From positions 1 through 9,255 of the forward strand of contig CAXIUT010000136.1 in NCBI GenBank assembly GCA_964035545.1: a DNA stretch of 9,255 nt, written 5' to 3'. Below, in pieces: positions 1 to 9,255 of the stretch. This DNA is from Bugula neritina (Eukaryota > Animalia > Bryozoa). The notes beneath the pieces are model-generated. The model was not told the origin of the DNA. It was given only the letters and a program-made list of their open reading frames with translations, and made no database searches. How positions within the stretch are numbered: position 1 is the first letter of the stretch; each line of letters opens with the position of its first letter. The translations under genes were made by a program, and so were the position numbers.

Positions 1-173
1 AACCAGACTTCGGGTGGTGCGACCTGCCATGACGCAGGGTCTTTATTCGAGCGTACATCATGAAAGTCACCAGGAACGCGGGCACCAAGGCGGTAGCTTA
101 GGCTAAACCAAATGACGGCAAGCGCTGCTACAAGGCCTAACAGACGAATCGGCCAGACGGTAATTACTGACAC
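1..173 (-). CDS. N-terminal part (57 codons visible) of a hypothetical membrane-anchored or exported protein, truncated by the left edge
   Basis: Manual translation from GTG at 173-171: MSVITVWPIRLLGLVAALAVIWFSLSYRLGARVPGDFHDVRSNKDPASWQVAPPEVW..., open to the edge. GGAGGAGG lies 6 nt upstream (plus-strand cctcctcc, 180-187). Overlaps the upstream gene end by 10 nt. Hydrophobic stretch LLGLVAALAVIWFSL. Confidence 0.7.
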   Translation of the reverse strand, partial: MSVITVWPIRLLGLVAALAVIWFSLSYRLGARVPGDFHDVRSNKDPASWQVAPPEVW

Positions 174-2518
174 AGGAAGCCTCCTCCCTGAAGTGGAATA
201 CCCTGTGGATCAAGGGCTTCCGGGTGATAGCCAATTACATCATCCCGTCCCTGCTGACGGCAGAGTTTTAGACCTTCCGCTTTTCTGTTGCCCGGTACCG
301 AGCCGAATGCACCGGGATTACGCCAGTTTATGACTTGCCTTTGCATGAGTCGGGGGGAGTTTTGGAGTGATGGTTGGTAGTTGATATGCTCTTCCATTTT
401 TAACTCTGCTACTGAGAAAGCACAATAGTAGGCAAAGGTGGTTTCCCCCGCCATATTTATCGCTTCCGGATGGAAGCCCAGGGCTTTGATACCACCTTGT
501 TCCTGACAGTTACGGTTGCCGATAACCTCTTCTTCCGGGGTTAAATGGCCAAATAATTCAGGGCGGTCAAACTGAGGAAGGGCGGTGCTGATGCTCATTT
601 GTGGGCGTTGTTGTGCGGAGTAAGTTACTTTCAAGGTTGTTCCAGATTGGTTAGCAGCAACGGCGGCGGTGTGTTTAATGCGTTGCTGCTCAGCGATGCG
701 TGCCTGCGCCTGTTTAATACGTTGTTGCTCAGCAATGTGGGCCTGCGCCTGTTTAATACGTTGTTGCTCAGCGATGCGTGCCTGCTCTTGTGCGAATCGT
801 TGTTGCTCAACAAGACGAGCGGCCTGTTCTTGTTTAATGCGTCGTTGCTTCGCAATGTGTGCTTGTTGTTCTTGTTCAATGCGCTGCTGCTCAGCGATGA
901 GTGCTTGTTCCCGTTTGATTCGCCGTTGTTCGGCGATGCGCGCCTGTTGCTCGAAGCGTTGTTGCTTAGCAATACGGGCTATCTGTTCTTGTTTAATACG
1001 TTGTTGTTCTGCAATGCGCGCCTGTTTAGCGCGTTGCTGCTCTACGATGCGTTTTTGTTCCTGTTCGAACCGTTGTTGCTCAGCAATACGAAACTGCTCC
1101 CGTTTGATTTTCTGCTGTTCTGCGATACGAGCTCGTTCCCGTTTAATGTGTTGTTGTTCTACGATGCGAGCTTGTTGTTCGAATCGTTGTTGCTCAGCAA
1201 TGCGCGTTGACTGTTCCTGTTTAATGCGCTGTTGTTCTGCAATGCGTACCTGTTCTTGTACTAATCGTTGTTGCCCGGCGCTGTTTTCCTGTTTCTGTTC
1301 TTGTGTGATCTGCTGTTGTTCTGCTCTTGCGGTGAGTACTTGTTCCTGTTCTACAGGCTGTTTTTCATCAATGTGAATTTGCTCTTGCGACTTTATACTA
1401 TCAGTTGAAATTCCCGCTTTTTTTTCAGCTGACCGATCTCTGGGTTTTATATCACCAGGGGCAAAAGCCTCTCTATTCGCATTCGCAGAGAGAAAAATGG
1501 TTTTTCTTTCTTCTGTGTTACTAACAGAGGTGACAGGTTGCGATTCTGTTTGAAAATAGCTGCTTAAGTACCCGCTGAGGCCGACGATAACCAGGCATAT
1601 AGCCAGAGCATAATAAAGTTTCCTGTTTTTGGCGGCGGTGTCGTTTTGTGCCGGAAGCGGGTCAACCAGGTAGAGTAACCGTTCTGGCGAATCTGGTCGG
1701 CTGGCACGTTTAAAAGCCAGTCCCGAATGAAGTGAGTCCCAGCTTTTTTCCGGCAGTTTGATGACCGGGTTGGGGATGCTTTCTTTTAAGGCTGCCTGAA
1801 CTGAATTGTCTTCAATAAAAGGCAGGTAGCCATTGAGCAATTGATAGAGTAGAACAGATACAGCAAAAGTGTCATCCGTCGCTACTGGTCTTTCGCCCAT
1901 CGCCACTTCAGGGCTAATTGTTGGGGCGTGTAATATTAGTCCTTGTGGTTGGTTTGCCTGTTGGCTGTTAAGAAAAACATGGTACGCGACAACCACCGGC
2001 TCATTAATGAGTTGGGCATGTCTGTTCTCCGGGTTGTACGCGATTGCGCCCGCTTCAAGAAAGGCATAACCTGATCTAACAGGGGCTGTTTTAAGCGCTT
2101 GGGTGACCGCTACCGCTGTATCTATGGCTGTAGCAACCGGATAACCAAAACGGCCTACCCGGTTTATTTCTTCCTGTAGTAAGGCATGGTGCAGGTTGGA
2201 GATAATAAACCAACACTGTTGTTCCTCTGTGCCAAAGTCATTGATATGGACATCCCATTCAGCCTCACCGGTTTGATATTTTTTCAATACTGAAATCAAT
2301 ATGGCATTGAAGCCGGGTTGCTGGGAAAGTGTGGCGTTAACGATACCTATGGTAAGTGGTTCTGCGTCTTTATTGTCGTTAATGGTTTTGACATCATGGC
2401 CAAGATAAAAGTCAACTAAGGCTGTGGATGTGCGTAATGTATGCGCGAAGTAGCGTTCATTCCCAACATGAAAGCCCGTGAAATCTTTGTCGTTTTGGTA
2501 GACCGCTAGTGTTGCCAT
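164..2518 (-). CDS. 784-aa bitopic membrane protein: N-terminal Ser/Thr-kinase-like pseudokinase, TM helix (aa ~301-322), Q/E/R-rich TolA-like repeat stalk, two C-terminal copies of a two-Cys domain
   Basis: Long ORF. C-lobe kinase motifs ISPEVAMG (APE-like), DDTFAVSVLLYQLLNGYLPF (subdomain IX) and RASRP (subdomain XI). TM segment LYYALAICLVIVGLSGYLSSYF preceded by KNRK. 15 RIAEQQR-type repeats. C-terminal domain is shared with the lipoprotein at 6884-7264. Confidence 0.85.
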   Translation of the reverse strand: MATLAVYQNDKDFTGFHVGNERYFAHTLRTSTALVDFYLGHDVKTINDNKDAEPLTIGIVNATLSQQPGFNAILISVLKKYQTGEAEWDVHINDFGTEEQQCWFIISNLHHALLQEEINRVGRFGYPVATAIDTAVAVTQALKTAPVRSGYAFLEAGAIAYNPENRHAQLINEPVVVAYHVFLNSQQANQPQGLILHAPTISPEVAMGERPVATDDTFAVSVLLYQLLNGYLPFIEDNSVQAALKESIPNPVIKLPEKSWDSLHSGLAFKRASRPDSPERLLYLVDPLPAQNDTAAKNRKLYYALAICLVIVGLSGYLSSYFQTESQPVTSVSNTEERKTIFLSANANREAFAPGDIKPRDRSAEKKAGISTDSIKSQEQIHIDEKQPVEQEQVLTARAEQQQITQEQKQENSAGQQRLVQEQVRIAEQQRIKQEQSTRIAEQQRFEQQARIVEQQHIKRERARIAEQQKIKREQFRIAEQQRFEQEQKRIVEQQRAKQARIAEQQRIKQEQIARIAKQQRFEQQARIAEQRRIKREQALIAEQQRIEQEQQAHIAKQRRIKQEQAARLVEQQRFAQEQARIAEQQRIKQAQAHIAEQQRIKQAQARIAEQQRIKHTAAVAANQSGTTLKVTYSAQQRPQMSISTALPQFDRPELFGHLTPEEEVIGNRNCQEQGGIKALGFHPEAINMAGETTFAYYCAFSVAELKMEEHINYQPSLQNSPRLMQRQVINWRNPGAFGSVPGNRKAEGLKLCRQQGRDDVIGYHPEALDPQGIPLQGGGFLCQ
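180..187 (-). promoter_or_regulatory. Shine-Dalgarno GGAGGAGG for the ORF starting at 173
   Basis: Near-perfect SD 6 nt before GTG, embedded in the Gly-Gly-Gly codons at the end of the upstream gene. Confidence 0.6.
671..1246 (-). repeat. Intragenic imperfect tandem repeat, 15 units of about 11-14 codons (last truncated; consensus RIAEQQRIKQEQA)
   Basis: Counted from the translation: RIAEQQRIKQEQST, RIAEQQRFEQQA, RIVEQQHIKRERA ... RIAEQQRIKQAQA, HIAEQQRIKQAQA, RIAEQQRIKH. The plus-strand motif cgttgttgctcagc recurs. Confidence 0.92.
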
Positions 2519-2610
2519 AGTTGTCAGTATGCATGCGAAGAGGTGTTAGGGATTACGCTGTCTCAATTTTTTAATGTTGTGATCTGCAATAGAGAGTGCA
2601 AAAGCTAACA

Positions 2611-2648
2611 CCCTCACCCCAACCCCTCTCCCTCAAAAGGAGAGGGGC
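2611..2648. repeat. BoxC/REP-like extragenic palindrome; may act as an RNA hairpin downstream of wzc
   Basis: ccctcaccccaa-cccctctcc-ctcaaaa-ggagagggg: perfect 9-bp stem (2623-2631/2639-2647), 7-nt loop, pyrimidine-rich leader. Resembles the E. coli BoxC-type CCCTCACCC..CCCTCTCCC..GGGAGAGGG repeat, from recall. Confidence 0.65.
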
Positions 2649-2687
2649 TAAAGAAATCATGCACTTTCCCTCTCGTCATATGAGGGA

Positions 2688-2795
2688 GTTGTAAAAGATG
2701 TTCCGGTGCATTCGTTCTGCCCTTCGGCTCCGCTCAGGGCGCAGCTCGATGGTACACCCGAGGGCTGAGCGGAGTCGAAGCCCGGCTTTTACGGC
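2688..2795. repeat. Nested inverted-repeat element (MITE/REP-like)
   Basis: Inner IR cttcggctccgctcag (2722-2737) / ctgagcggagtcgaag (2765-2780), 15/16 match, 27-nt spacer. Outer imperfect IR gttgtaaaag (2688-2697) / cttttacggc (2786-2795), 8/10 match. Confidence 0.6.
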
Positions 2796-2828
2796 ATCCC
2801 CCCCCTATGAGAGGGGATCAAGGCTTTA

Positions 2829-5800
2829 TCATGCAGCATCAAGAAACTTCTTATCGTCATTGTTACCGTAATTATAATAATCGTAGTTGTAGTTATAGCC
2901 ATAACCACTACCCTGTTTGGTCTTAGTAGCAACAAAGCCGATAACATTGGTACGTGCGTGGTACAGGCGTTTTAATGAGCCAAGCAATACCTGCTTTTTC
3001 GACTCACCCATAGACACGGCAACCATCGTCGCATCTGCACGGCTTGAAATCACCAGCGCGTCTGCCAGTCCTAGTACCGGTGGCATATCCAGCACGATGA
3101 CATCGAATGTTTTATCAACACGTGCCATAGCATACAGTTCATCTAAGCGATCGCTGCTTAACAGTTCCACCGGATTCGGCGTCATTGGCCCCGCTGTGAC
3201 AACATAAACGCCAGGAATCTGGCAACCCTGAGTTACGGCTTCAATATCATCCTGGTCAGTTAGGTAGTTCGTCAACCCTTTGCTGTTATCTAAGCGCAGG
3301 CGTTTATGTACTGATGGGTTACGCAAGTCGGTATCAACTAATAAAACTGTTTTGCCATCCTGAGCAAAGGTACTGGCAATATTGACCGCACTGGTTGATT
3401 TACCTTCTGCGGCCGATGAACTGGTAATAGCGATGACCGGAGGTACACCAGAGCGGGTCGAGAATTTTAGATTAGTGCGCAATGATCGGTAAGCCTCAGC
3501 AAACGCAGAGCGCGGATCGGTTTGCGTCATCATGGCAAGTTTTAATGAATCTTGTTGCTTGGCTTTTGGAATAATGCCAAGTAAAGGCAGGCCGCCACTA
3601 ATCTTGCTTAAGTCATCAGCGTTCTTAATGCGGTCATCCAGGAATTCAAGCAGGAATGCCAACACAGTTCCCAAAAATAACCCTAATACTGCGCCTAACA
3701 TTAGGTTTAGGCGTGTATTGGGTTTGTGTTTACTAAAGGGAACGACAGCTTTATCAACAACAGCAATATTATTGTTACCAATACCGCCAGCGATACCAAT
3801 CTGTTTTTGGCGATCTAGCAGGCCGGTGTAAATATTGCGGATACTGCCGAGTTCGCGCTTGAGTTCATTTAAGCCGATGTTTTGGTCACGTAGTTCCACA
3901 GATTTGGACTTCTGATCTTCCAGCTGTTGGCGGATCGCTTCTTCCTGTTCCTGTGCGGCGATCATTTTGCCTTTTAGACCTTCCTGTACGGTGGTATCAA
4001 TATTGGCTGTTTCCAGCGCTATCTGCTTTTTCAATTCAGCGATGCGTTGTTGCAGGTTAATTTTATTATTATTGTCTGAAGCACTGGTTTCACGGGCAAT
4101 TTCAATTCGGAGCTGGTCAATTTGCTTCTTTAGGTAGGATTGTGTGCCGGTTTGCAAAGCCCGTGTCTCGCGCCCAATATCGACACGCAACTGGTCAATT
4201 TTCTTTTTCAGATAAGTGCGGTTGCTGTTAGTTATATTGTTAGTTTCTCGTGCAATCTCACTTTTCAACTGATTAATTTGCTCAGTAAGGTTAGTGCGGG
4301 TGTTTTGTGTCACAGCACGCGTTTCCTGAGCTATTTCCTGTTTTAGCTGATTGATTTGCTGAGTCAGATTGTTACGTACCGATGCATTTTCCTGTACAAG
4401 TTGTTTTTTTACTTCATTAATTTTTTGACGAAGTTGAACCATTGCTGGATAAGCTGGTTTGTAGATTTGTGCTTTTTCCTGGTATTGACTTTCAAGTTGT
4501 GCCAGCTGACTTTTAAGGCTCCTTTGTATGGAAGAACCCCCGGCAGAAGTAGTGTCGCCCTGGCCACCTTGTAGTTGCGTTTGTAGCTGGGCTAGCCGTT
4601 GCTTTAGCGTTTGTACAACCGGGTTTTTAAAGGCATTGGATGCACTGATTTCAGCCTGATACTGACTTTGCAATTGTGCAAGGCGACTTTTCATCGTACG
4701 AATTACCGGATTTTCTATAGCCCTCGAGGCAGATAATTCACCCTGATAATCGCGTTGTAGTTTTGCTAACTCCTGGGTCATTGAACGAATAACCGGGTTA
4801 TCCCCGGCACGTGAAGCAGTGACTTCGGCTTGATATTGACTTTGCAGTTGAGACAGCCGTTGCCGTAAGGCACGAATATTGGAATCATCGTATGAGCTGG
4901 ATGTGGTAACGGCTGCTTTGTATTGGCTTTCCAGCTTGGCCAGCTGTTCTTTTAAAGTTTGGATAGTGCTATTACCTAAGACCTCGTTGGCACTGTCGGC
5001 ATCCCGGGTTTCGGCATAAGCAATTTCAGCTTTTACTCTTTCGGCTTCGGCTTTAGTTAAAGCAACGCTTAATTCTCGTAATTTATTATTGACAAGTGAT
5101 ACATCATCATCAGTCAGAATAATGCCATTGTCTTTTGCATATTTATTAAGCTTTTCTTCTGCCTCGAGCAACTTCTCGCGTGTGTCAACTATTTCCTTTT
5201 GAACCATGTCTTCAGCAAAAGAAGCCGACTTAATACGGCGCTCAATGTTTACTTTAATGTAATTACTAGCCAGCGTATTAACAATGGTTGCTGCCCGCTC
5301 AGGGTTGGTGTCGGTATAATGAACAGTAACAATTTGTGAATTTTTTACCGGCGCAACGGATAGCCGTGCTAACAACCTATCAGCGATAGGGCGTTCGCCA
5401 AGCAATTTTTTTTCATCGGTTTCTTCTTCCAGCGTGTCATCAACAACTGTGTCGTCCATGACAATGCTGTCTTCTCCGTTTTCATCCTGAGCGTCTTTGC
5501 TGTTTCCAGAAAATAAAGCTGTAAATTGTTTACCAAGATCAGCTATCCAGGAGGATTCTGTGCTGGCTAGTTTGGCCTGGCGGAAAACCGATTCCATACC
5601 CAAGTCTTCAATCGTACGATGCGCCAACATACGACTTTTAAGCAATTCGTATTGGGTTTGGTAAAAATCCCGTCGGTTAACATTGCCGCCTTTTTCAACA
5701 TCGTAATCCAGTACCTGTGATTCTTCCTTAATCTGTATGGTGGTACTGGCCCGGTAGGTGGGCTTCTGCATTAAGGTGAATACCAGGGAGGCAAGGAATA

Positions 5801-5996
5801 TCAGGGCGGCTATGGATAAAATCAGCCACTTGCGGCGCAACAAAACCTGCCATAGTTCACGCAGGTCAATTTCATCATCGTCATCATCCCGGTCAGTATC
5901 TTCTACCGGATAGCCATGCGGTCTGATGGCCCCCTGTGTTTGTGCGACGGGCAGCTGGCTGCCCGGTAACACTGCAATATTATCTTCGTTTTTCAT
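2829..5996 (-). CDS. wzc: Polysaccharide co-polymerase / bacterial tyrosine autokinase (PCP-2a, Wzc/GumC family) with an expanded periplasmic region. Start is either ATG at 5996 (1055 aa, preferred) or TTG at 6032 (1067 aa)
   Basis: N-terminal EIDLRELWQVLLRRKWLIL plus TM1 and PTYRAST. TM2 LNLMLGAVLGLFLGTVLAFLLEFLD preceded by VVDKAVVP...KP. AEAYRSLRTNL, Walker A ITSSSAAEGKST, Walker A' LLVDTDLR, Walker B VIVLDMPP, C-terminal tyrosine cluster GYGYNYNYDYYNYG. Directly downstream of wza. Confidence 0.95.
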   Translation of the reverse strand: MKNEDNIAVLPGSQLPVAQTQGAIRPHGYPVEDTDRDDDDDEIDLRELWQVLLRRKWLILSIAALIFLASLVFTLMQKPTYRASTTIQIKEESQVLDYDVEKGGNVNRRDFYQTQYELLKSRMLAHRTIEDLGMESVFRQAKLASTESSWIADLGKQFTALFSGNSKDAQDENGEDSIVMDDTVVDDTLEEETDEKKLLGERPIADRLLARLSVAPVKNSQIVTVHYTDTNPERAATIVNTLASNYIKVNIERRIKSASFAEDMVQKEIVDTREKLLEAEEKLNKYAKDNGIILTDDDVSLVNNKLRELSVALTKAEAERVKAEIAYAETRDADSANEVLGNSTIQTLKEQLAKLESQYKAAVTTSSSYDDSNIRALRQRLSQLQSQYQAEVTASRAGDNPVIRSMTQELAKLQRDYQGELSASRAIENPVIRTMKSRLAQLQSQYQAEISASNAFKNPVVQTLKQRLAQLQTQLQGGQGDTTSAGGSSIQRSLKSQLAQLESQYQEKAQIYKPAYPAMVQLRQKINEVKKQLVQENASVRNNLTQQINQLKQEIAQETRAVTQNTRTNLTEQINQLKSEIARETNNITNSNRTYLKKKIDQLRVDIGRETRALQTGTQSYLKKQIDQLRIEIARETSASDNNNKINLQQRIAELKKQIALETANIDTTVQEGLKGKMIAAQEQEEAIRQQLEDQKSKSVELRDQNIGLNELKRELGSIRNIYTGLLDRQKQIGIAGGIGNNNIAVVDKAVVPFSKHKPNTRLNLMLGAVLGLFLGTVLAFLLEFLDDRIKNADDLSKISGGLPLLGIIPKAKQQDSLKLAMMTQTDPRSAFAEAYRSLRTNLKFSTRSGVPPVIAITSSSAAEGKSTSAVNIASTFAQDGKTVLLVDTDLRNPSVHKRLRLDNSKGLTNYLTDQDDIEAVTQGCQIPGVYVVTAGPMTPNPVELLSSDRLDELYAMARVDKTFDVIVLDMPPVLGLADALVISSRADATMVAVSMGESKKQVLLGSLKRLYHARTNVIGFVATKTKQGSGYGYNYNYDYYNYGNNDDKKFLDAA
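3978..4973 (-). repeat. Intragenic repeat block in wzc: six ~29-aa units, the YKPAYP turn, then six 22-26-aa units
   Basis: A units start at 4973, 4886, 4799, 4712, 4625, 4538 (87-bp period; e.g. NPVIRTMKSRLAQLQSQYQAEISASNAFK). Turn at 4446-4463. B units mostly have a 78-bp period (e.g. LTEQINQLKSEIARETNNITNSNRTY). Confidence 0.9.
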
Positions 5997-6002
5997 AGCA
6001 AA

Positions 6003-6032
6003 ATTATACGTGTCCGGATTGTTAGGGATCAA
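6003..6032 (-). promoter_or_regulatory. Candidate sigma70-type promoter immediately upstream of wzc
   Basis: Minus strand TTGATC (6032-6027), 18-nt spacer, TATAAT (6008-6003), 6 nt, ATG (5996). Motif match only. Confidence 0.35.
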
Positions 6033-6076
6033 TCACTAAATATAATCGTGATTGATCATTGATCCTGATATTTTAG

Positions 6077-6793
6077 TTAGCCGCCAACCATTGAACGTAT
6101 AACATTTACCGGGCTTAATAAGGTACCGACTTCACGCAGCCAGTAACGGCTACCGGAGCGATGCGCGATGATGCGGTCATCATTACGGATATAGGGGTCT
6201 TTGGATTTACCAGCGCGTATATCGTTTAGGTTCAGATTGTAGGCTTTTACCTGTTCGCCACTTTTGCGAAATAATACGATTTTCGCTGGATCGGCCAGAT
6301 TGCCCGGCCCACCCGCGAGGGCCAGGGCTTGTAACAGGGTCATTTCACCTTTGATGGGGAAAACACCCGCTTTGGCGACTTCACCTTCTACGGTGACGCG
6401 CTGGCTGGTGAATTCTTCGATAGCGACAGTGACCTGTGGGTTTTGTAGGTAATCTTTGCTTAGACGATCAGCAATGCTCTTTTCCAGCGCGAATTGGGTC
6501 AGACCTTCGGCGCGCACATTACCAATTAACGGTAAGGAAATATTGCCGCGTGGGTCAACGCGTACTTTTTGGTTGAGTTCGTCGGCCTGGAAGACTTTGA
6601 TGCTGATTAAGTCGGAAGTGCCAATCTTGTATTCGACTCTGGGAGCTGTGTAGTCGAGTTCGGTTAGATCAGAGAATATTTTTTTGCCGGAGCTATCTTT
6701 CGCATCGGCAGAGAAACCACCGCCTAAAGAGCAGGCAGAAAGTGTTAGGCAGACACTTAGGGTGAAAATGATTTTTTTGGGACTTTTTAACAT
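6077..6793 (-). CDS. wza: Polysaccharide export outer-membrane lipoprotein (OPX; short Wza/GumB type), 238 aa
   Basis: Lipobox LSAC (Cys21). Poly_export signature YKIGTSDLISIKVF...VRVDPRGNISLPLIGNVRAEGLT...YLQNPQVTV. One SLBB domain VTVEGEVAKAGVFPIKGEMTLLQALALAGG...DPYIRNDDRI. Adjacent to wzc. Confidence 0.95.
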   Translation of the reverse strand: MLKSPKKIIFTLSVCLTLSACSLGGGFSADAKDSSGKKIFSDLTELDYTAPRVEYKIGTSDLISIKVFQADELNQKVRVDPRGNISLPLIGNVRAEGLTQFALEKSIADRLSKDYLQNPQVTVAIEEFTSQRVTVEGEVAKAGVFPIKGEMTLLQALALAGGPGNLADPAKIVLFRKSGEQVKAYNLNLNDIRAGKSKDPYIRNDDRIIAHRSGSRYWLREVGTLLSPVNVIRSMVGG

Positions 6794-6883
6794 TTTGCTA
6801 TGAACCTGTAGATTTGTTTGTCATTGAATGGAACAAGTTTGGCCCTTTGTTTGGTGGTTATAGTCGTTGTTGATAATTTTGAA

Positions 6884-7264
6884 TTAGCTACAGAGAAAAC
6901 CACCGCCCGGAATCGGTTTACCGTTAACGCTGAGTGCTTTTGGGTGATAACCGCGTGCGTGTTTTCCACCGACGGCCCGGCAGGTCTGCATGCCTTCTTG
7001 CTTTTTGTTGGCAGGAACCGGGCCGAACCACTGGCTATTGTCCCAGGCGACGGATTGTACCGGCTTACCTTTCCCCCATGTTACTTCCTGTCTTACCAGT
7101 TTTGGCGGGGTTTTGGCGTAGGTCTTGCCAACAGGTAGGTTGTGGGTTGTTGGGCCTTTGACAGCTTTGCCTGCGGTGGTGTCTACGTTGCTAATGTTGT
7201 TGGTACAGCCCTGGGTTAACAGGGTGATTATGGAGAGAGTTAAAAGGGTGTTTAGTGTTTTCAT
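6884..7264 (-). CDS. Hypothetical lipoprotein (126 aa) with one C-terminal two-Cys domain homologous to the C-terminus of the 784-aa protein
   Basis: Signal MKTLNTLLTLSIITLLTQG-C20 (lipobox-like TQGC). Strong SD. 27/53 ungapped identities (hand count) with the last 53 aa of ORF 164-2518. Confidence 0.88.
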   Translation of the reverse strand: MKTLNTLLTLSIITLLTQGCTNNISNVDTTAGKAVKGPTTHNLPVGKTYAKTPPKLVRQEVTWGKGKPVQSVAWDNSQWFGPVPANKKQEGMQTCRAVGGKHARGYHPKALSVNGKPIPGGGFLCS

Positions 7265-7425: not shown

Positions 7426-7899
7426 TTAATCTAAGGTGCTGGGGAAGTTTGGATACAGGGTGGATTTTTCCAGTTGGCCGGTTTTGTCATGGAAGCTGAG
7501 TTGGCCGTTTTGATCGCAGAGCCAGAATTCCTGTGCGCCTTTGTTGAAGTAGAGTTGTTTTTTGTGTTGCATTTCAGCCTGTGTGTTGCTGGGGGAAAGT
7601 ACTTCGATACATAGTAGAGGGGCGAAGGCGGCGGCGACATTATTTTGGATTTTGGCAGTTTGTTCTGAGGTTAGTACGCCGACATCAACAACTTTAGTGC
7701 CATCGGGGGTTTCAACCGGGAATTCGGGTACTACCAGACAATCGCTTGCCTGTTGGTTTAATAGTGCAATAATTTTTCCCTGGAAAATGACATGCATTAC
7801 ACTGGCCGGACTCATGATGATTTGTCCCTGTTGATTCAGTTCGATTTTGTAAGGGAGGTTTTGCAGTGTTGGGTCTGCACAGAGTTCCTGCCAGTTCAT
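7426..7899 (-). CDS. Uma2 family (DUF820) putative restriction-like endonuclease, 157 aa; probable start ATG at 7899 rather than 7971
   Basis: KIELNQQGQIIMSPA..H, KVVDV, PLLCIEVLSPSN, K..LYF..GAQEFWLCD are typical Uma2 motifs. ATG at 7899 lies 4 nt after the upstream stop, with GGA upstream. The 7971 start would overlap the upstream gene by 68 nt. Confidence 0.88.
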   Translation of the reverse strand: MNWQELCADPTLQNLPYKIELNQQGQIIMSPASVMHVIFQGKIIALLNQQASDCLVVPEFPVETPDGTKVVDVGVLTSEQTAKIQNNVAAAFAPLLCIEVLSPSNTQAEMQHKKQLYFNKGAQEFWLCDQNGQLSFHDKTGQLEKSTLYPNFPSTLD

Positions 7900-7903
7900 G
7901 GTT

Positions 7904-8491
7904 TTATCCGTGGTGTATGTCGAGTCCAACCTCTTTTCTAACCCGGCGGTAGATATGTAGCACAGGGACATTCAATTCGACGGATTCCAGTGCGAAGGTG
8001 TCATCAGCATAATAGGCTTCCTGTTGCCAGGAGGTGCGTCGTCTAAACAGTCGTACCAACGGCACATCCTGTGAAACCACGGCGTATTCCATGAGTGTTG
8101 GGATGCTGGTGTAATTTTCGAATTTCTCACGCAGATCGGTGCGTTGTGTGCTGTCCGAGAGTATTTCAACGATCAGTAGCGGTTTGGTGCAGCTGTATTG
8201 ATCATCATTGGAGAAATCACAGGCAGCCATAATGTCGGGGTAATAAGCGTAATCGTTACCCTTGTTTTGTAGAGTAACTTTCATATCCGATTGCCAGACG
8301 CGGCAGTGTTCATTGAGGTGATTTTCGATAAAAGCAGCAAAGCTCATCGCGATGGTGTTATGGGTAAGGCTGGCACCTGCCATTGCATAGATTTCGCCTG
8401 CTACGTATTCGCTGCGTGTTTCTACCTCACGTTCGCCGGTTAGGTAATCTTCGAAAGAAACAAAGTTGTGTTGTTCTAATGCTTGCGCCAT
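7904..8491 (-). CDS. Uma2 family (DUF820) putative restriction-like endonuclease, 195 aa
   Basis: SFEDYL..E, EYVAGEIYAMAGAS..HN.I, SDMKV, YYPDIM, PLLIVEILSDST...D..EKF..Y..IPTLMEY.VVSQD. SD GGAG at 8501-8504. Confidence 0.93.
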   Translation of the reverse strand: MAQALEQHNFVSFEDYLTGEREVETRSEYVAGEIYAMAGASLTHNTIAMSFAAFIENHLNEHCRVWQSDMKVTLQNKGNDYAYYPDIMAACDFSNDDQYSCTKPLLIVEILSDSTQRTDLREKFENYTSIPTLMEYAVVSQDVPLVRLFRRRTSWQQEAYYADDTFALESVELNVPVLHIYRRVRKEVGLDIHHG

Positions 8492-8558: not shown

Positions 8559-9255
8559 CTACATACCCCAAACCCCCAATTCACGCCCTTGCTGGTTTTC
8601 GGTACGTTGCCAGATTTTATCATCCCACGCTACATCCGGGCGGCGGTCAAAGATAATAAGGTGCGCCTCGTCCGCACCGCATTGGTCGGCATAGCCAGCG
8701 GTTTGCTCCAGTCCTTCGTTCAGGGTGGTTTCCAGTGATTTATAGAGGATTTTTAATTCCAGCACAATACGTTGCACTTCGCCGTAATAGCCTTGTTCCT
8801 CATCCACCGGCCATTCAATCAGCAGGTCGGTACGTTTTCTACCGAGTCCGTATTCACGGTTAATACGTCCGCCGCCGTTAATAATGCGTTGTAGAAAGGC
8901 TTGCAAGAGGAGTTGTGGCCCGGCTTCTTTATAGTCGAAGCGTTCGATCCAGGCGTCGGCATTTTCGCGGAAAAACTGTTGAAATGCGGCCAGCAGCCTG
9001 GGCATGTCAATGTGTCGATTCGGGGTGAGGTACCAGCTCTGTGGTTGGTACAGGCCGTCCTGAATAGGCGCAGTGATTTCACGTGGCAGGATTTCGCGAT
9101 AAATCCGGTTAGCAATCGTGAGGCTTGGTTTGCGGCGGATGAGTCCGAGGTCTCTGCTGTATTGAAGATCGTTTTCGCGCAGGTCGCCAATTTCTGCGGG
9201 GCTGCTGAGGAGGTGGCTAACAATAGCGTGTACCCTGGGTTCGCGTAATTTATCG
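8559..9255 (-). CDS. C-terminal part of a probable AAA-ATPase fused to a PD-(D/E)XK nuclease-like domain; 5' end lies outside the window
   Basis: The frame of the 148-aa ORF is open to the edge (from 9254: DKLREPRVHAIVSHLL...DLQYSRDLGLIRRKPSLTIANRIYREILPREI...HIDMPRLL). Nuclease-like motifs INREYGLGRKRTDLLI...IVLELKI...GLEQTAGYAD. The ATPase part is inferred from family resemblance and is not visible here. Confidence 0.8.
   Translation of the reverse strand, partial: DKLREPRVHAIVSHLLSSPAEIGDLRENDLQYSRDLGLIRRKPSLTIANRIYREILPREITAPIQDGLYQPQSWYLTPNRHIDMPRLLAAFQQFFRENADAWIERFDYKEAGPQLLLQAFLQRIINGGGRINREYGLGRKRTDLLIEWPVDEEQGYYGEVQRIVLELKILYKSLETTLNEGLEQTAGYADQCGADEAHLIIFDRRPDVAWDDKIWQRTENQQGRELGVWGM

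What the first reader, a model, noticed from the sequence alone, without database searches (positions are those of the whole stretch)
164..7264. Candidate undescribed trans-envelope module: one two-Cys domain shared by a lipoprotein and a pseudokinase receptor, bracketing wza-wzc
Seen: co-oriented genes lipoprotein(X) - wza - wzc - pseudokinase-TM-stalk-(X)2 - membrane protein. Domain X of the lipoprotein (6887-7045, WDNSQWFGPVPANKKQEGMQTCRAVGGKHARGYHPKALSVNGKPIPGGGFLCS) aligns without gaps to the last 53 aa of the 784-aa protein (167-325, WRNPGAFGSVPGNRKAEGLKLCRQQGRDDVIGYHPEALDPQGIPLQGGGFLCQ), 27/53 identical by hand. Established: canonical Wza-Wzb-Wzc and GumB-GumC systems have no such partners that I know of. 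Inference: X is a periplasmic disulfide-bonded module, displayed both from the outer membrane (lipoprotein, Thr at +2) and from the inner membrane on a long stalk. It may bind the polymer, peptidoglycan, Wza or itself, and so couple export status to a cytoplasmic pseudokinase.
Basis: partly seen in the sequence, partly recalled or inferred. Interest (0 to 1): 0.85.

Follow-up and report, generated by a model that had tools for sequence, protein, structure and literature searches.

The report
Dead-kinase receptor in polysaccharide export operon

Summary
The C-terminal domain X of the 126-aa lipoprotein matches the end of the 784-aa protein (28/56 identical, no gaps, E=5e-18). A degenerate second copy lies upstream (E=4e-6).

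X is about 70 residues with two invariant Cys. It has no Pfam, NCBIfam, PDB-sequence or Foldseek match. An exhaustive profile search found only 206 clusters among 1.84 billion. Most are ~100-aa lipoproteins.

The 784-aa protein is a Hanks-type pseudokinase (profile E=3.6e-18 to PknB; Lys, HRD-Asp and DFG-Asp all lost). It continues with one TM helix, a disordered linker, a ~184-residue helix made of 39-nt repeats, then X' and X.

The order wza-wzc-pseudokinase-X-(TM/TPR/CBM-like protein)-(Wzy_C) recurs in at least 8 independent loci. Fission forms also exist, with a pseudokinase lacking X next to separate X lipoproteins.

Of 82 genome loci with X, 20 have polysaccharide genes within 8 kb. These are mainly Thiotrichaceae, Chromatiaceae and Comamonadaceae. 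About 75% have none, and "bracketing" of wza-wzc is specific to the window's lineage.

Interpretation: partly supported. I read it as a non-catalytic periplasmic sensor or scaffold of a Class-3 OPX/PCP-2a machine. The ligand, X-X contact and signalling remain untested.

The parts
6884..7264 (-). Lipoprotein-X gene (126 aa): signal peptide, lipobox LTQGC (Cys20, Thr +2), low-complexity linker, C-terminal X domain
   Evidence: ORF and translation. Nine 126-aa orthologues at 60-70% identity. No Pfam or NCBIfam family.
6887..7111 (-). X domain of the lipoprotein (res ~52-126): beta-hairpin, helix carrying Cys95, two strands, Cys125
   Evidence: AF2 model with pLDDT above 90 over res 41-126. Invariant W74, F80, C95, G105, G121, C125 across 119 sequences.
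6077..6793 (-). Short lipidated OPX (Wza-like, 238 aa): Poly_export plus one SLBB, lipobox LSAC; Class-3-like
   Evidence: PF02563 E=9.5e-25 and PF10531 E=1.4e-11. Below the cut-off of every NCBIfam equivalog. Class-3 definition taken from PMC12819527.
2829..6032 (-). PCP-2a BY-kinase (Wzc-like, 1067 aa) with a periplasmic helical region about 350 residues longer than in E. coli Wzc; C-terminal Tyr cluster
   Evidence: Wzz, GNVR and AAA_31. TIGR01007 157.9 bits against a cut-off of 108. TM segments 63-90 and 773-800. Internal 78-nt and 87/174-nt repeats.
2519..2828 (.). 310-nt spacer between wzc and the pseudokinase gene, with three inverted repeats
   Evidence: No Rfam match and no terminator-like site on the minus strand here. 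The same spacer is 15-64 nt in L001, L004, L005 and L006.
164..2518 (-). Pseudokinase-TM-stalk-X'-X gene (784 aa)
1649..2467 (-). Cytoplasmic Hanks-type pseudokinase domain (res ~18-290)
   Evidence: Family profile against PDB: E=3.6e-18 to S. aureus PknB 4eqm across the whole kinase domain. Foldseek top hits are PknB and PknA, prob 1.0. HRD is replaced by G-Y-A, DFG by N-E-P, and there is no beta3 Lys and no Gly-rich loop.
1553..1639 (-). Single transmembrane helix (res 294-322)
   Evidence: Hydropathy 300-322. AF2 helix 294-322.
677..1228 (-). Periplasmic stalk: one predicted continuous helix, res 431-614 (~27 nm if straight), E/R/K/Q-rich 13-aa repeats
   Evidence: AF2 H431-614, pLDDT 54-76. 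39-nt tandem repeats across ~633-1384.
413..613 (-). Proximal degenerate X' (res ~636-702): keeps FG, GFHP and both Cys; lacks Trp and the GGGF motif
   Evidence: BLASTP E=4e-6. Alignment A1. AF2 gives the same topology, pLDDT 83-90.
167..367 (-). Distal X (res ~718-784)
   Evidence: BLASTP E=5e-18. Sister to the X of the L001 orthologue, SH-aLRT 98.
1..173 (-). 5' end of the conserved downstream gene (DS): TM anchor, then TPR and a CBM_4_9-like domain in the full-length orthologues (~420 aa)
   Evidence: GTG overlaps the stop codon. DS profile hits the window at E=7e-17. TPR match to PDB E=1e-7. CBM_4_9 in 4 of 8 members, best E=4e-4.

Best explanation
The window holds the polymerisation and export end of a Wzx/Wzy-type exopolysaccharide locus from an unsampled relative of a Thiotrichaceae MAG. 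Two non-canonical parts are built around one new domain, X. X is a ~70-residue periplasmic alpha/beta domain with two invariant Cys (probably a disulfide) and a conserved aromatic/Gly/His surface (W, FGPVP, GYHP, GGGF). I read it as a ligand-binding module, most likely for a glycan. The 784-aa protein is a bitopic inner-membrane receptor or scaffold. It has a catalytically dead Hanks kinase domain in the cytoplasm and holds X' and X on a long helical stalk in the periplasm. It is a fixed member of this machine, always encoded between the Wzc co-polymerase/BY-kinase and a TM-anchored TPR/CBM-like protein, usually followed by a Wzy_C-family gene. It most likely reports a periplasmic state (polymer presence or envelope contact) to the cytoplasmic face through protein-protein contacts, for example with the Wzc kinase domain or its regulators, rather than by phosphotransfer. 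The separate lipoprotein is an old paralogue offering the same binding activity, probably from the outer membrane. Shown: domain sharing, loss of the catalytic residues, predicted topology, conserved gene order, fusion and fission variants. Inferred: the ligand, the disulfide, outer-membrane location, and signalling to Wzc.
For: Domain sharing. Family size and make-up: 206 clusters, mostly lipoproteins with 1-3 copies of X, plus 7 long pseudokinase forms. Kinase fold without catalytic residues. Topology and stalk. The order wza-wzc-PKX-DS(-Wzy_C) is conserved in the window, L001, L004/L096, L005, L006, L076, L093 and L094. Gaps between wzc and the pseudokinase gene are 15-64 nt in relatives, and DS overlaps the pseudokinase stop codon in the window. 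Fission forms: in Thiothrix lacustris (L013) and a Thiobacillus MAG (L020) the pseudokinase lacks X and separate X lipoproteins lie within ~1-1.5 kb. Old paralogy: lipoprotein X and receptor X each pair with their L001 counterpart rather than with each other. The commonest neighbours of X genes across genomes are Wzy_C (11 loci) and Polysacc_synt_2 (7 loci). 20 of 82 X loci have polysaccharide genes within 8 kb, in several families. DS carries a carbohydrate-binding-like domain.
Against: No binding, interaction or phenotype data exist. About 75% of X lipoproteins, including all Burkholderiaceae, Smithellaceae and Chromobacteriaceae loci, have no polysaccharide neighbour. Some two-X lipoproteins sit next to RTX or autotransporter genes instead, so X is not specific to this machine. 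L004 and L096 have the module with no X lipoprotein within 10 kb. The C-lobe of the AF2 model has low confidence because the alignment is shallow. No formal background rate for the enrichment was computed, and the positive loci are phylogenetically clustered. The 310-nt spacer in the window could allow separate transcription.
Confidence: 0.45

Rival explanations
1. Homotypic trans-envelope tether. X on the outer-membrane lipoprotein binds X on the stalked inner-membrane receptor, directly or through the polymer. This forms a periplasm-spanning ruler or contact sensor that reports export status to the pseudokinase.
For: The same domain is present on both proteins. The predicted 184-residue helix plus linker could span a periplasm of ~25-30 nm. 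Natural lipoproteins with 2 or 3 tandem copies of X exist. The lipoprotein is co-inherited with the receptor in the window and L001. An X lipoprotein lies within about 5 genes of the module in 6 of 9 cases.
Against: Stalk length is not conserved. The L001 orthologue (451 aa) has only ~70 residues between the TM helix and X. Modules exist without a nearby lipoprotein (L004, L096). Most X lipoproteins occur in loci without any receptor. No multimer prediction could be run here.
Confidence: 0.15
2. The lipoprotein is functionally unrelated to the export machine. X is a general periplasmic binding domain, for example for an envelope component such as peptidoglycan fragments (by analogy with PASTA), or an inhibitor-type small lipoprotein. 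One lineage of pseudokinase receptors recruited it as a sensor. The lipoprotein's adjacency is a by-product of where the locus was inserted.
For: L002 keeps lipoX-DUF192-serS without the module, whereas L005 has the module inserted next to the same trio. 62 of 82 X loci have no polysaccharide neighbour. In several modules the lipoprotein is on the opposite strand.
Against: In the window and L001 the lipoprotein lies immediately upstream of wza on the same strand. Fission forms pair an X-less pseudokinase with X lipoproteins. X lies beside Wzy_C in three orders.
Confidence: 0.25
3. X works with the Wzy_C-family protein rather than with Wza-Wzc. It could be an accessory factor of the polymerase or ligase, or X-bearing lipoproteins could be acceptor substrates if the Wzy_C protein is a PglL-type O-oligosaccharyltransferase.
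For: Wzy_C is the single most frequent neighbour of X genes (11 loci within 3 kb). It is directly adjacent in Comamonadaceae (L036, L090) and in Thiothrix (L030, L056).
Against: In the core module DS lies between the receptor and Wzy_C. L004 has no Wzy_C hit in the 10 kb downstream. No glycosylation sequon was looked for. This reading rests on proximity alone.
Confidence: 0.1

Closest known systems
PASTA-type Hanks kinases (PknB of M. tuberculosis, StkP of S. pneumoniae, PknB/Stk1 of S. aureus)
   Same: Architecture: cytoplasmic Hanks kinase fold, one TM helix, then repeated small (~70-aa) extracytoplasmic alpha/beta domains. These are the best sequence and structure matches of the N-terminal domain.
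   Different: Here the catalytic Lys, HRD-Asp and DFG-Asp are all lost. The ectodomain is X, not PASTA: no Pfam hit and no Foldseek hit. The host is a diderm, the gene sits in a wza-wzc operon, and a long helical stalk is inserted.
M. tuberculosis MviN (ActPs3 pseudokinase fused to MurJ, with a carbohydrate-binding ectodomain)
   Same: A non-catalytic Hanks pseudokinase tied to a glycan-precursor export or assembly machine, paired with an extracytoplasmic domain and acting as a regulatory scaffold (PMC12599244).
   Different: There is no MurJ domain here and the protein is separate from the transporter. The pseudokinase family, the ectodomain and the phylum all differ. Regulation of MviN by PknB and FhaA has no known counterpart here.
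[quoted passage not shown]
   Same: Proteobacterial; all three catalytic residues lost; hydrophobic beta3 strand in place of VAIK-Lys (for example VLLLLV in P0030); TM region after the kinase domain (PMC12599244 and bioRxiv 10.1101/2025.01.12.632604; alignment).
   Different: The HRD position reads G-Y-G or G-Y-A (GYGYLE), not G-L-W. No GLW reference sequence could be fetched, so relatedness is untested. No function, ectodomain or operon context is reported for GLW.
Class-3 OPX secretion systems (M. xanthus WzaB-WzcB-WzpB and the EPS/MASC paralogues)
   Same: A short lipidated Wza with Poly_export plus one SLBB and no outer-membrane-spanning helix, paired with a PCP-2a Wzc (PMC12819527, PMC9603273, PMC9601211).
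   Different: No Wzp beta-barrel porin gene is present in the window or in the conserved module. The extra conserved members here (pseudokinase-X, DS, lipoprotein-X) are not named in the title, abstract or section headings of PMC12819527; its full text and the other two papers were not read.
EcpK, the BY-pseudokinase of the M. xanthus EPS pathway
   Same: A catalytically dead kinase-like protein needed by a Wzx/Wzy pathway (PMC12004946).
   Different: EcpK is a P-loop BY-kinase-type pseudokinase, a different fold from a Hanks kinase. The Wzc here has an intact-looking BY-kinase domain and Tyr cluster.

Membership tests
OPX / Wza, Class 3 | Poly_export (PF02563) domain | tested here: met
   E=9.5e-25, 87 bits against a cut-off of 28.
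OPX / Wza, Class 3 | Lipidated N-terminus, a single SLBB, no C-terminal outer-membrane-spanning helix | tested here: met
   Lipobox LSAC read from the sequence. 238 aa with one SLBB. No hydrophobic C-terminal segment.
OPX / Wza, Class 3 | Partner Wzp beta-barrel porin | not testable with these tools
   None in the window or in the 10-kb flanks of related modules. It could be encoded elsewhere in the genome.
PCP-2a / Wzc BY-kinase | Wzz plus GNVR periplasmic region between two TM helices | tested here: met
   PF02706 E=1.7e-17 and PF13807 E=2.2e-12. TM segments 63-90 and 773-800.
PCP-2a / Wzc BY-kinase | BY-kinase P-loop domain and C-terminal tyrosine cluster | tested here: met
   TIGR01007 157.9 bits against a cut-off of 108. 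A Tyr-rich C-terminal tail is visible in the translation.
Hanks-type (eukaryote-like) Ser/Thr kinase superfamily | Kinase fold (N-lobe plus C-lobe, APE and subdomain IX/XI motifs) | tested here: met
   Profile E=3.6e-18 to 4eqm over positions 18-284. Foldseek prob 1.0. SPE, DDTF..Y..L.G..PF and an invariant Arg are conserved.
Hanks-type (eukaryote-like) Ser/Thr kinase superfamily | Catalytic triad: VAIK-Lys, HRD-Asp, DFG-Asp, plus the Gly-rich loop | tested here: not met
   None is conserved in the 10 family members. HRD is replaced by GY(G/A) and DFG by N.P (D.P in P0155). The protein is therefore a pseudokinase.
GLW pseudokinases | GLW motif in place of HRD | tested here: not met
   The aligned positions read GYG, GYA, AYG or GFG. 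Family definition.
GLW pseudokinases | [quoted passage not shown] | tested here: inconclusive
   Similar features are seen, but no GLW sequence was available for comparison.
PASTA kinases | PASTA repeats in the ectodomain | tested here: not met
   No PASTA hit in Pfam. Only the kinase part of NF033483 matches weakly. The X model has no PDB neighbour.
Any described family for domain X | Match to a Pfam or NCBIfam model, or to a solved structure | tested here: not met
   0 of 119 members hit Pfam. NCBIfam gave only 2 stray sub-threshold hits. PDB profile search best E=1. Foldseek best E=1.4 with TM below 0.2. NCBI names are all 'hypothetical protein'. InterPro and AlphaFold DB could not be searched.

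The most novel reading that the evidence does not exclude
The lipoprotein and the stalked pseudokinase receptor form a periplasm-spanning sensor through X-X or X-polymer-X contact. The sensor feeds outer-membrane or export status back to the cytoplasmic face of Wzc. That would make a Hanks-type pseudokinase an integral subunit of a Wzx/Wzy secretion machine, and X a new fold for envelope-spanning contact.
Probability: 0.15. Interest if true: 0.8.

Novelty: new variant of a known kind. Interest (0 to 1): 0.6.

Why it matters
How Wzx/Wzy-dependent machines sense polymer passage and couple it to Wzc cycling is unresolved. This is especially so for Class-3 OPX systems, whose trans-envelope organisation has only recently been outlined. 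A conserved non-catalytic Hanks-type receptor encoded between Wzc and the polymerase-side genes is a concrete, testable candidate for that coupling. Bacterial pseudokinase families are almost entirely without assigned function, and this one comes with a defined operon context. X itself is a compact, confidently modelled domain (pLDDT above 90) with no structural or sequence neighbour, so it is a candidate new fold or family worth filing. The family is small and largely confined to Pseudomonadota (a few Smithellaceae loci aside), with the module itself seen only in Thiotrichaceae-like genomes, which limits how general the finding is.

Tried and rejected
- The search for related loci with X alignments A1 and A2 failed twice because no stretch was conserved enough. 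I replaced it with a degenerate DNA pattern for GYHP.A-(10 aa)-GG[FY].C. Of the 86 hits, 82 were true X.
- The search for homologous proteins on the pseudokinase region and on the full-length alignment returned essentially only the L001 orthologue. The word index is swamped by the repeats.
- The metagenome scan with the pseudokinase alignment gave only 5 loci.
- Foldseek of the X model against PDB found nothing.
- I considered that the downstream DS protein might be the missing Wzp beta-barrel porin of a Class-3 system. I rejected this: it has one TM anchor, then TPR and a CBM-like jelly roll.
- I considered that the two X copies in the window arose by a recent intra-locus duplication or conversion. 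I rejected this because each pairs with its L001 orthologue.
- The antisense ORFs 599-1210 and 669-1376 on the plus strand are artefacts of the 39-nt repeats.
- Neither Rfam nor the promoter and terminator scans gave anything usable.
- The window is bacterial, not human. No toxin or effector gene and no animal or plant virus is involved.


Full report
**1. What is in the window**

All relevant genes lie on the minus strand.
- 6884-7264 encodes a 126-aa lipoprotein with lipobox LTQGC and Thr at +2.
- 6077-6793 encodes a 238-aa lipoprotein with Poly_export and one SLBB domain.
- 2829-6032 encodes a 1067-aa Wzc-type protein. It has Wzz and GNVR domains and a BY-kinase domain (TIGR01007, 157.9 bits against a cut-off of 108). 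It also has two TM segments and a C-terminal Tyr cluster.
- 164-2518 encodes the 784-aa protein.
- A further gene starts at a GTG (173-171) that overlaps the 784-aa stop codon and runs off the window.
- Upstream lie two Uma2-family nuclease genes and a 148-aa ORF with no family hit.

The window is bacterial. Its nearest relative among the fetched loci is a Thiotrichaceae MAG (L001), about 72% identical in nucleotides over wzc. The window's own genome is not in the genome collection.

**2.

BLASTP of the lipoprotein against the 784-aa protein gives 28/56 identities without gaps, E=5e-18. A second match to res 650-692 has E=4e-6. The two Cys are invariant in an alignment of 119 family members, together with W74, F80, G105 and G121.

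A conserved PP.LV strand precedes the Trp. The AF2 model (119-sequence alignment, pLDDT above 90 over res 41-126) gives a beta-hairpin, a helix carrying Cys95 and two further strands ending in Cys125.

- No Pfam hit in 119 members.
- Only two stray sub-threshold NCBIfam hits.
- No PDB sequence match: best E=1 with the profile.
- No Foldseek match: best E=1.4, TM below 0.2.
- NCBI calls the members "hypothetical protein".

An exhaustive profile search of 1.84 billion cluster representatives found only 206 proteins at E<=1e-3. Most are ~100-aa lipoproteins with one X. About 25 have two copies and two have three. Seven are long proteins (451-821 aa) that all carry a weak Pkinase match.

**4. The 784-aa protein is a pseudokinase receptor**

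- The single sequence matches StkP and PknB C-lobes at E=2.4e-5.
- A profile of ten family members matches S. aureus PknB (4eqm) at E=3.6e-18 over the whole kinase domain.
- Foldseek of the AF2 model returns PknB and PknA first, with probability 1.0.
- In the alignment the Gly-rich loop and beta3 Lys are absent, HRD is replaced by G-Y-(G/A), and DFG by N-x-P. The APE-like SPE motif, subdomain IX and the subdomain XI Arg are conserved.

The rest of the protein follows from prediction:

| Residues | Feature |
|---|---|
| 294-322 | single TM helix |
| 323-430 | disordered |
| 431-614 | one continuous helix, about 27 nm if straight |
| 640-700 | X' |
| 723-784 | X |

X' and X have the same topology, with pLDDT 76-90. 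The helix is encoded by 39-nt repeats. The predicted C-lobe has low confidence because the alignment holds only 8 sequences.

**5. Conserved context**

The gene order wza, wzc, pseudokinase-X, DS (~420 aa) recurs, usually followed by a Wzy_C gene. It is seen in L001, L004 (and the related L096), L005, L006, L076, L093 and L094 as well as in the window. Gaps between wzc and the pseudokinase gene are 15-64 nt in those loci.

DS has one TM anchor, then TPR repeats (PDB profile E=1e-7) and a CBM_4_9-like region (4 of 8 members, best E=4e-4).

The lipoprotein's position varies:
- Upstream of wza only in the window and L001.
- After Wzy_C in L005, L094, L056 and in Thiothrix sp. Bin_56_1. In that genome the two genes are four locus tags apart.
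- Absent within 10 kb in L004 and L096.

In Thiothrix lacustris (L013) and a Thiobacillus MAG (L020) the pseudokinase lacks X, and separate X lipoproteins lie about 1-1.5 kb away. This fusion/fission pattern is independent evidence that the pseudokinase and X work together.

A tree of X domains pairs the window's lipoprotein X with the L001 lipoprotein X (support 94). It pairs the window's receptor X with the L001 receptor X (support 98). The two are therefore old paralogues, not a recent local copy. The tree rests on only 64 columns, so deeper branches are unreliable.

**6. Is X linked to polysaccharide genes in general?**

A degenerate DNA pattern for the GYHP...GGF.C motif hit 86 genome loci, of which 82 contain a true X. 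The taxa are mainly Thiotrichaceae, Chromatiaceae, Burkholderiales and Neisseriales.

Within the 8-kb stretches, 20 of 82 loci hold Wza, Wzc, Wzy_C, Polysacc_synt_2, the pseudokinase or DS:

| Family | Loci with such a gene |
|---|---|
| Thiotrichaceae | 8 of 12 |
| Chromatiaceae | 5 of 13 |
| Comamonadaceae | 2 of 4 |
| Burkholderiaceae | 0 of 7 |
| Smithellaceae | 0 of 4 |
| Chromobacteriaceae | 0 of 3 |

Clustering all neighbours within 3 kb gives Wzy_C as the most frequent family (11 loci), then Polysacc_synt_2 (7 loci). Five two-X lipoproteins sit next to RTX or autotransporter genes.

I did not compute a formal background. From general knowledge a genome holds a few such clusters, so a random 8-kb stretch should hit one about 1% of the time. 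The link is lineage-dependent, however, and most X lipoproteins stand elsewhere. In L002 the X lipoprotein keeps its serS-DUF192 neighbours at a site where L005 has the module inserted. This weakens adjacency as evidence for the downstream-type lipoproteins.

**7. Mechanism**

*Shown:*
- A new periplasmic two-Cys domain is shared by a lipoprotein and a receptor.
- The receptor's kinase domain has lost its catalytic residues.
- The receptor is a fixed member of a locus with a short OPX and an elongated PCP-2a.
- Fusion and fission variants exist.

*Inferred:*
- X binds a ligand, probably a glycan. This rests on the conserved aromatic, His and Gly positions and on the company of a CBM-like protein and Wzy_C.
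- The receptor acts as a scaffold that relays periplasmic state to Wzc or its partners.
- The lipoprotein faces the periplasm from the outer membrane (Thr at +2, using the E. coli sorting rule).

The homotypic tether idea remains possible. It is weakened by the variable stalk (the L001 orthologue has about 70 linker residues) and by modules that lack the lipoprotein.

**8. Comparison with known systems**

- In architecture the receptor works like PASTA kinases and like the MviN pseudokinase with its carbohydrate-binding ectodomain (PMC12599244). It is a member of neither family.
- Its motifs differ from the proteobacterial GLW pseudokinases, although the general build is similar.
- The Wza fits the Class-3 OPX description (PMC12819527). 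No Wzp porin gene is present in the module.
- EcpK (PMC12004946) is a BY-type pseudokinase, a different fold.
- A full-text search for pseudokinase, Wzc and exopolysaccharide found no description of a Hanks-type pseudokinase in such an operon.

**9. Verdict**

- Observation: confirmed.
- Interpretation: partly supported.
- Novelty: new variant of a known kind, namely a new domain family plus a pseudokinase receptor as a conserved accessory of a known export system.
- Interest: 0.6.

Noticed in passing
window 7426-7971 and 7904-8491 (-): Two tandem Uma2-family (PF05685) putative restriction endonuclease genes, overlapping by 68 nt, lie directly upstream of the lipoprotein gene. In the relative L001 glycosyltransferase and epimerase genes occupy that side.
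   Followed up: partly
window 8559-9005 (-): A 148-aa ORF with no Pfam or NCBIfam hit.
   Followed up: partly
window 2519-2828: A 310-nt spacer between wzc and the pseudokinase gene holds three inverted repeats (16-20-nt arms, one 94% complementary). The same spacer is 15-64 nt in related loci, so this may be an inserted palindromic element. It has no Rfam match.
   Followed up: partly
window 4079-4370 and 4480-4944 (-), inside wzc: Internal 78-nt (x4) and 87/174-nt repeats lengthen the periplasmic helical region of Wzc to about 350 residues more than in E. coli Wzc. The receptor stalk is likewise built of 39-nt repeats (633-1384). Both periplasmic rods seem to grow by repeat expansion.
   Followed up: partly
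window 599-1210 and 669-1376 (+): Long Cys/Leu-rich antisense ORFs opposite the stalk repeats. They are artefacts of the repeat, not genes.
   Followed up: yes
window 1-173 (-); L001:15757-17055, L004:12490-13767, L005:12113-13372, L006:5870-7120: The conserved downstream protein DS (~420 aa) has no Pfam assignment above threshold. It consists of a TM anchor, TPR repeats and a CBM_4_9-like domain. It always follows the pseudokinase-X gene and usually precedes a Wzy_C gene.
   Followed up: partly
L013:2342-5282 (Thiothrix lacustris DSM 21227); L020:44-3391 (Thiobacillus MAG): Fission variants: a pseudokinase-TM protein with a low-complexity periplasmic tail and no X, convergent with one or two separate X lipoprotein genes.
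   Followed up: partly
L012, L027, L032, L045, L070: Lipoproteins with X (two copies in four of the loci, one in L032) lie beside giant RTX-repeat and autotransporter genes. This is a second recurrent context for X, unrelated to Wza-Wzc.
   Followed up: no
L002:8197-10641 versus L005:5323-17467: The same flanks (M23 peptidase-gcvTHP on one side, lipoX-DUF192-serS on the other) enclose cysDN in L002 and the whole wza-wzc-PKX-DS-Wzy_C module in L005. The module therefore behaves as an insertable cassette.
   Followed up: partly
L001:18518-19078; L005:14754-15224; also L018, L058, L074, L079: A 156-222-aa protein with no Pfam hit recurs next to X lipoproteins or Wzy_C in six Thiotrichales loci (Thiotrichaceae-type plus one Thiolinea).
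   Followed up: no
L036:809-2625; L090:5800-7622 (Comamonadaceae): The X lipoprotein gene directly abuts, and may overlap, the 3' end of a Wzy_C gene, next to a Polysacc_synt_2 gene.
   Followed up: no
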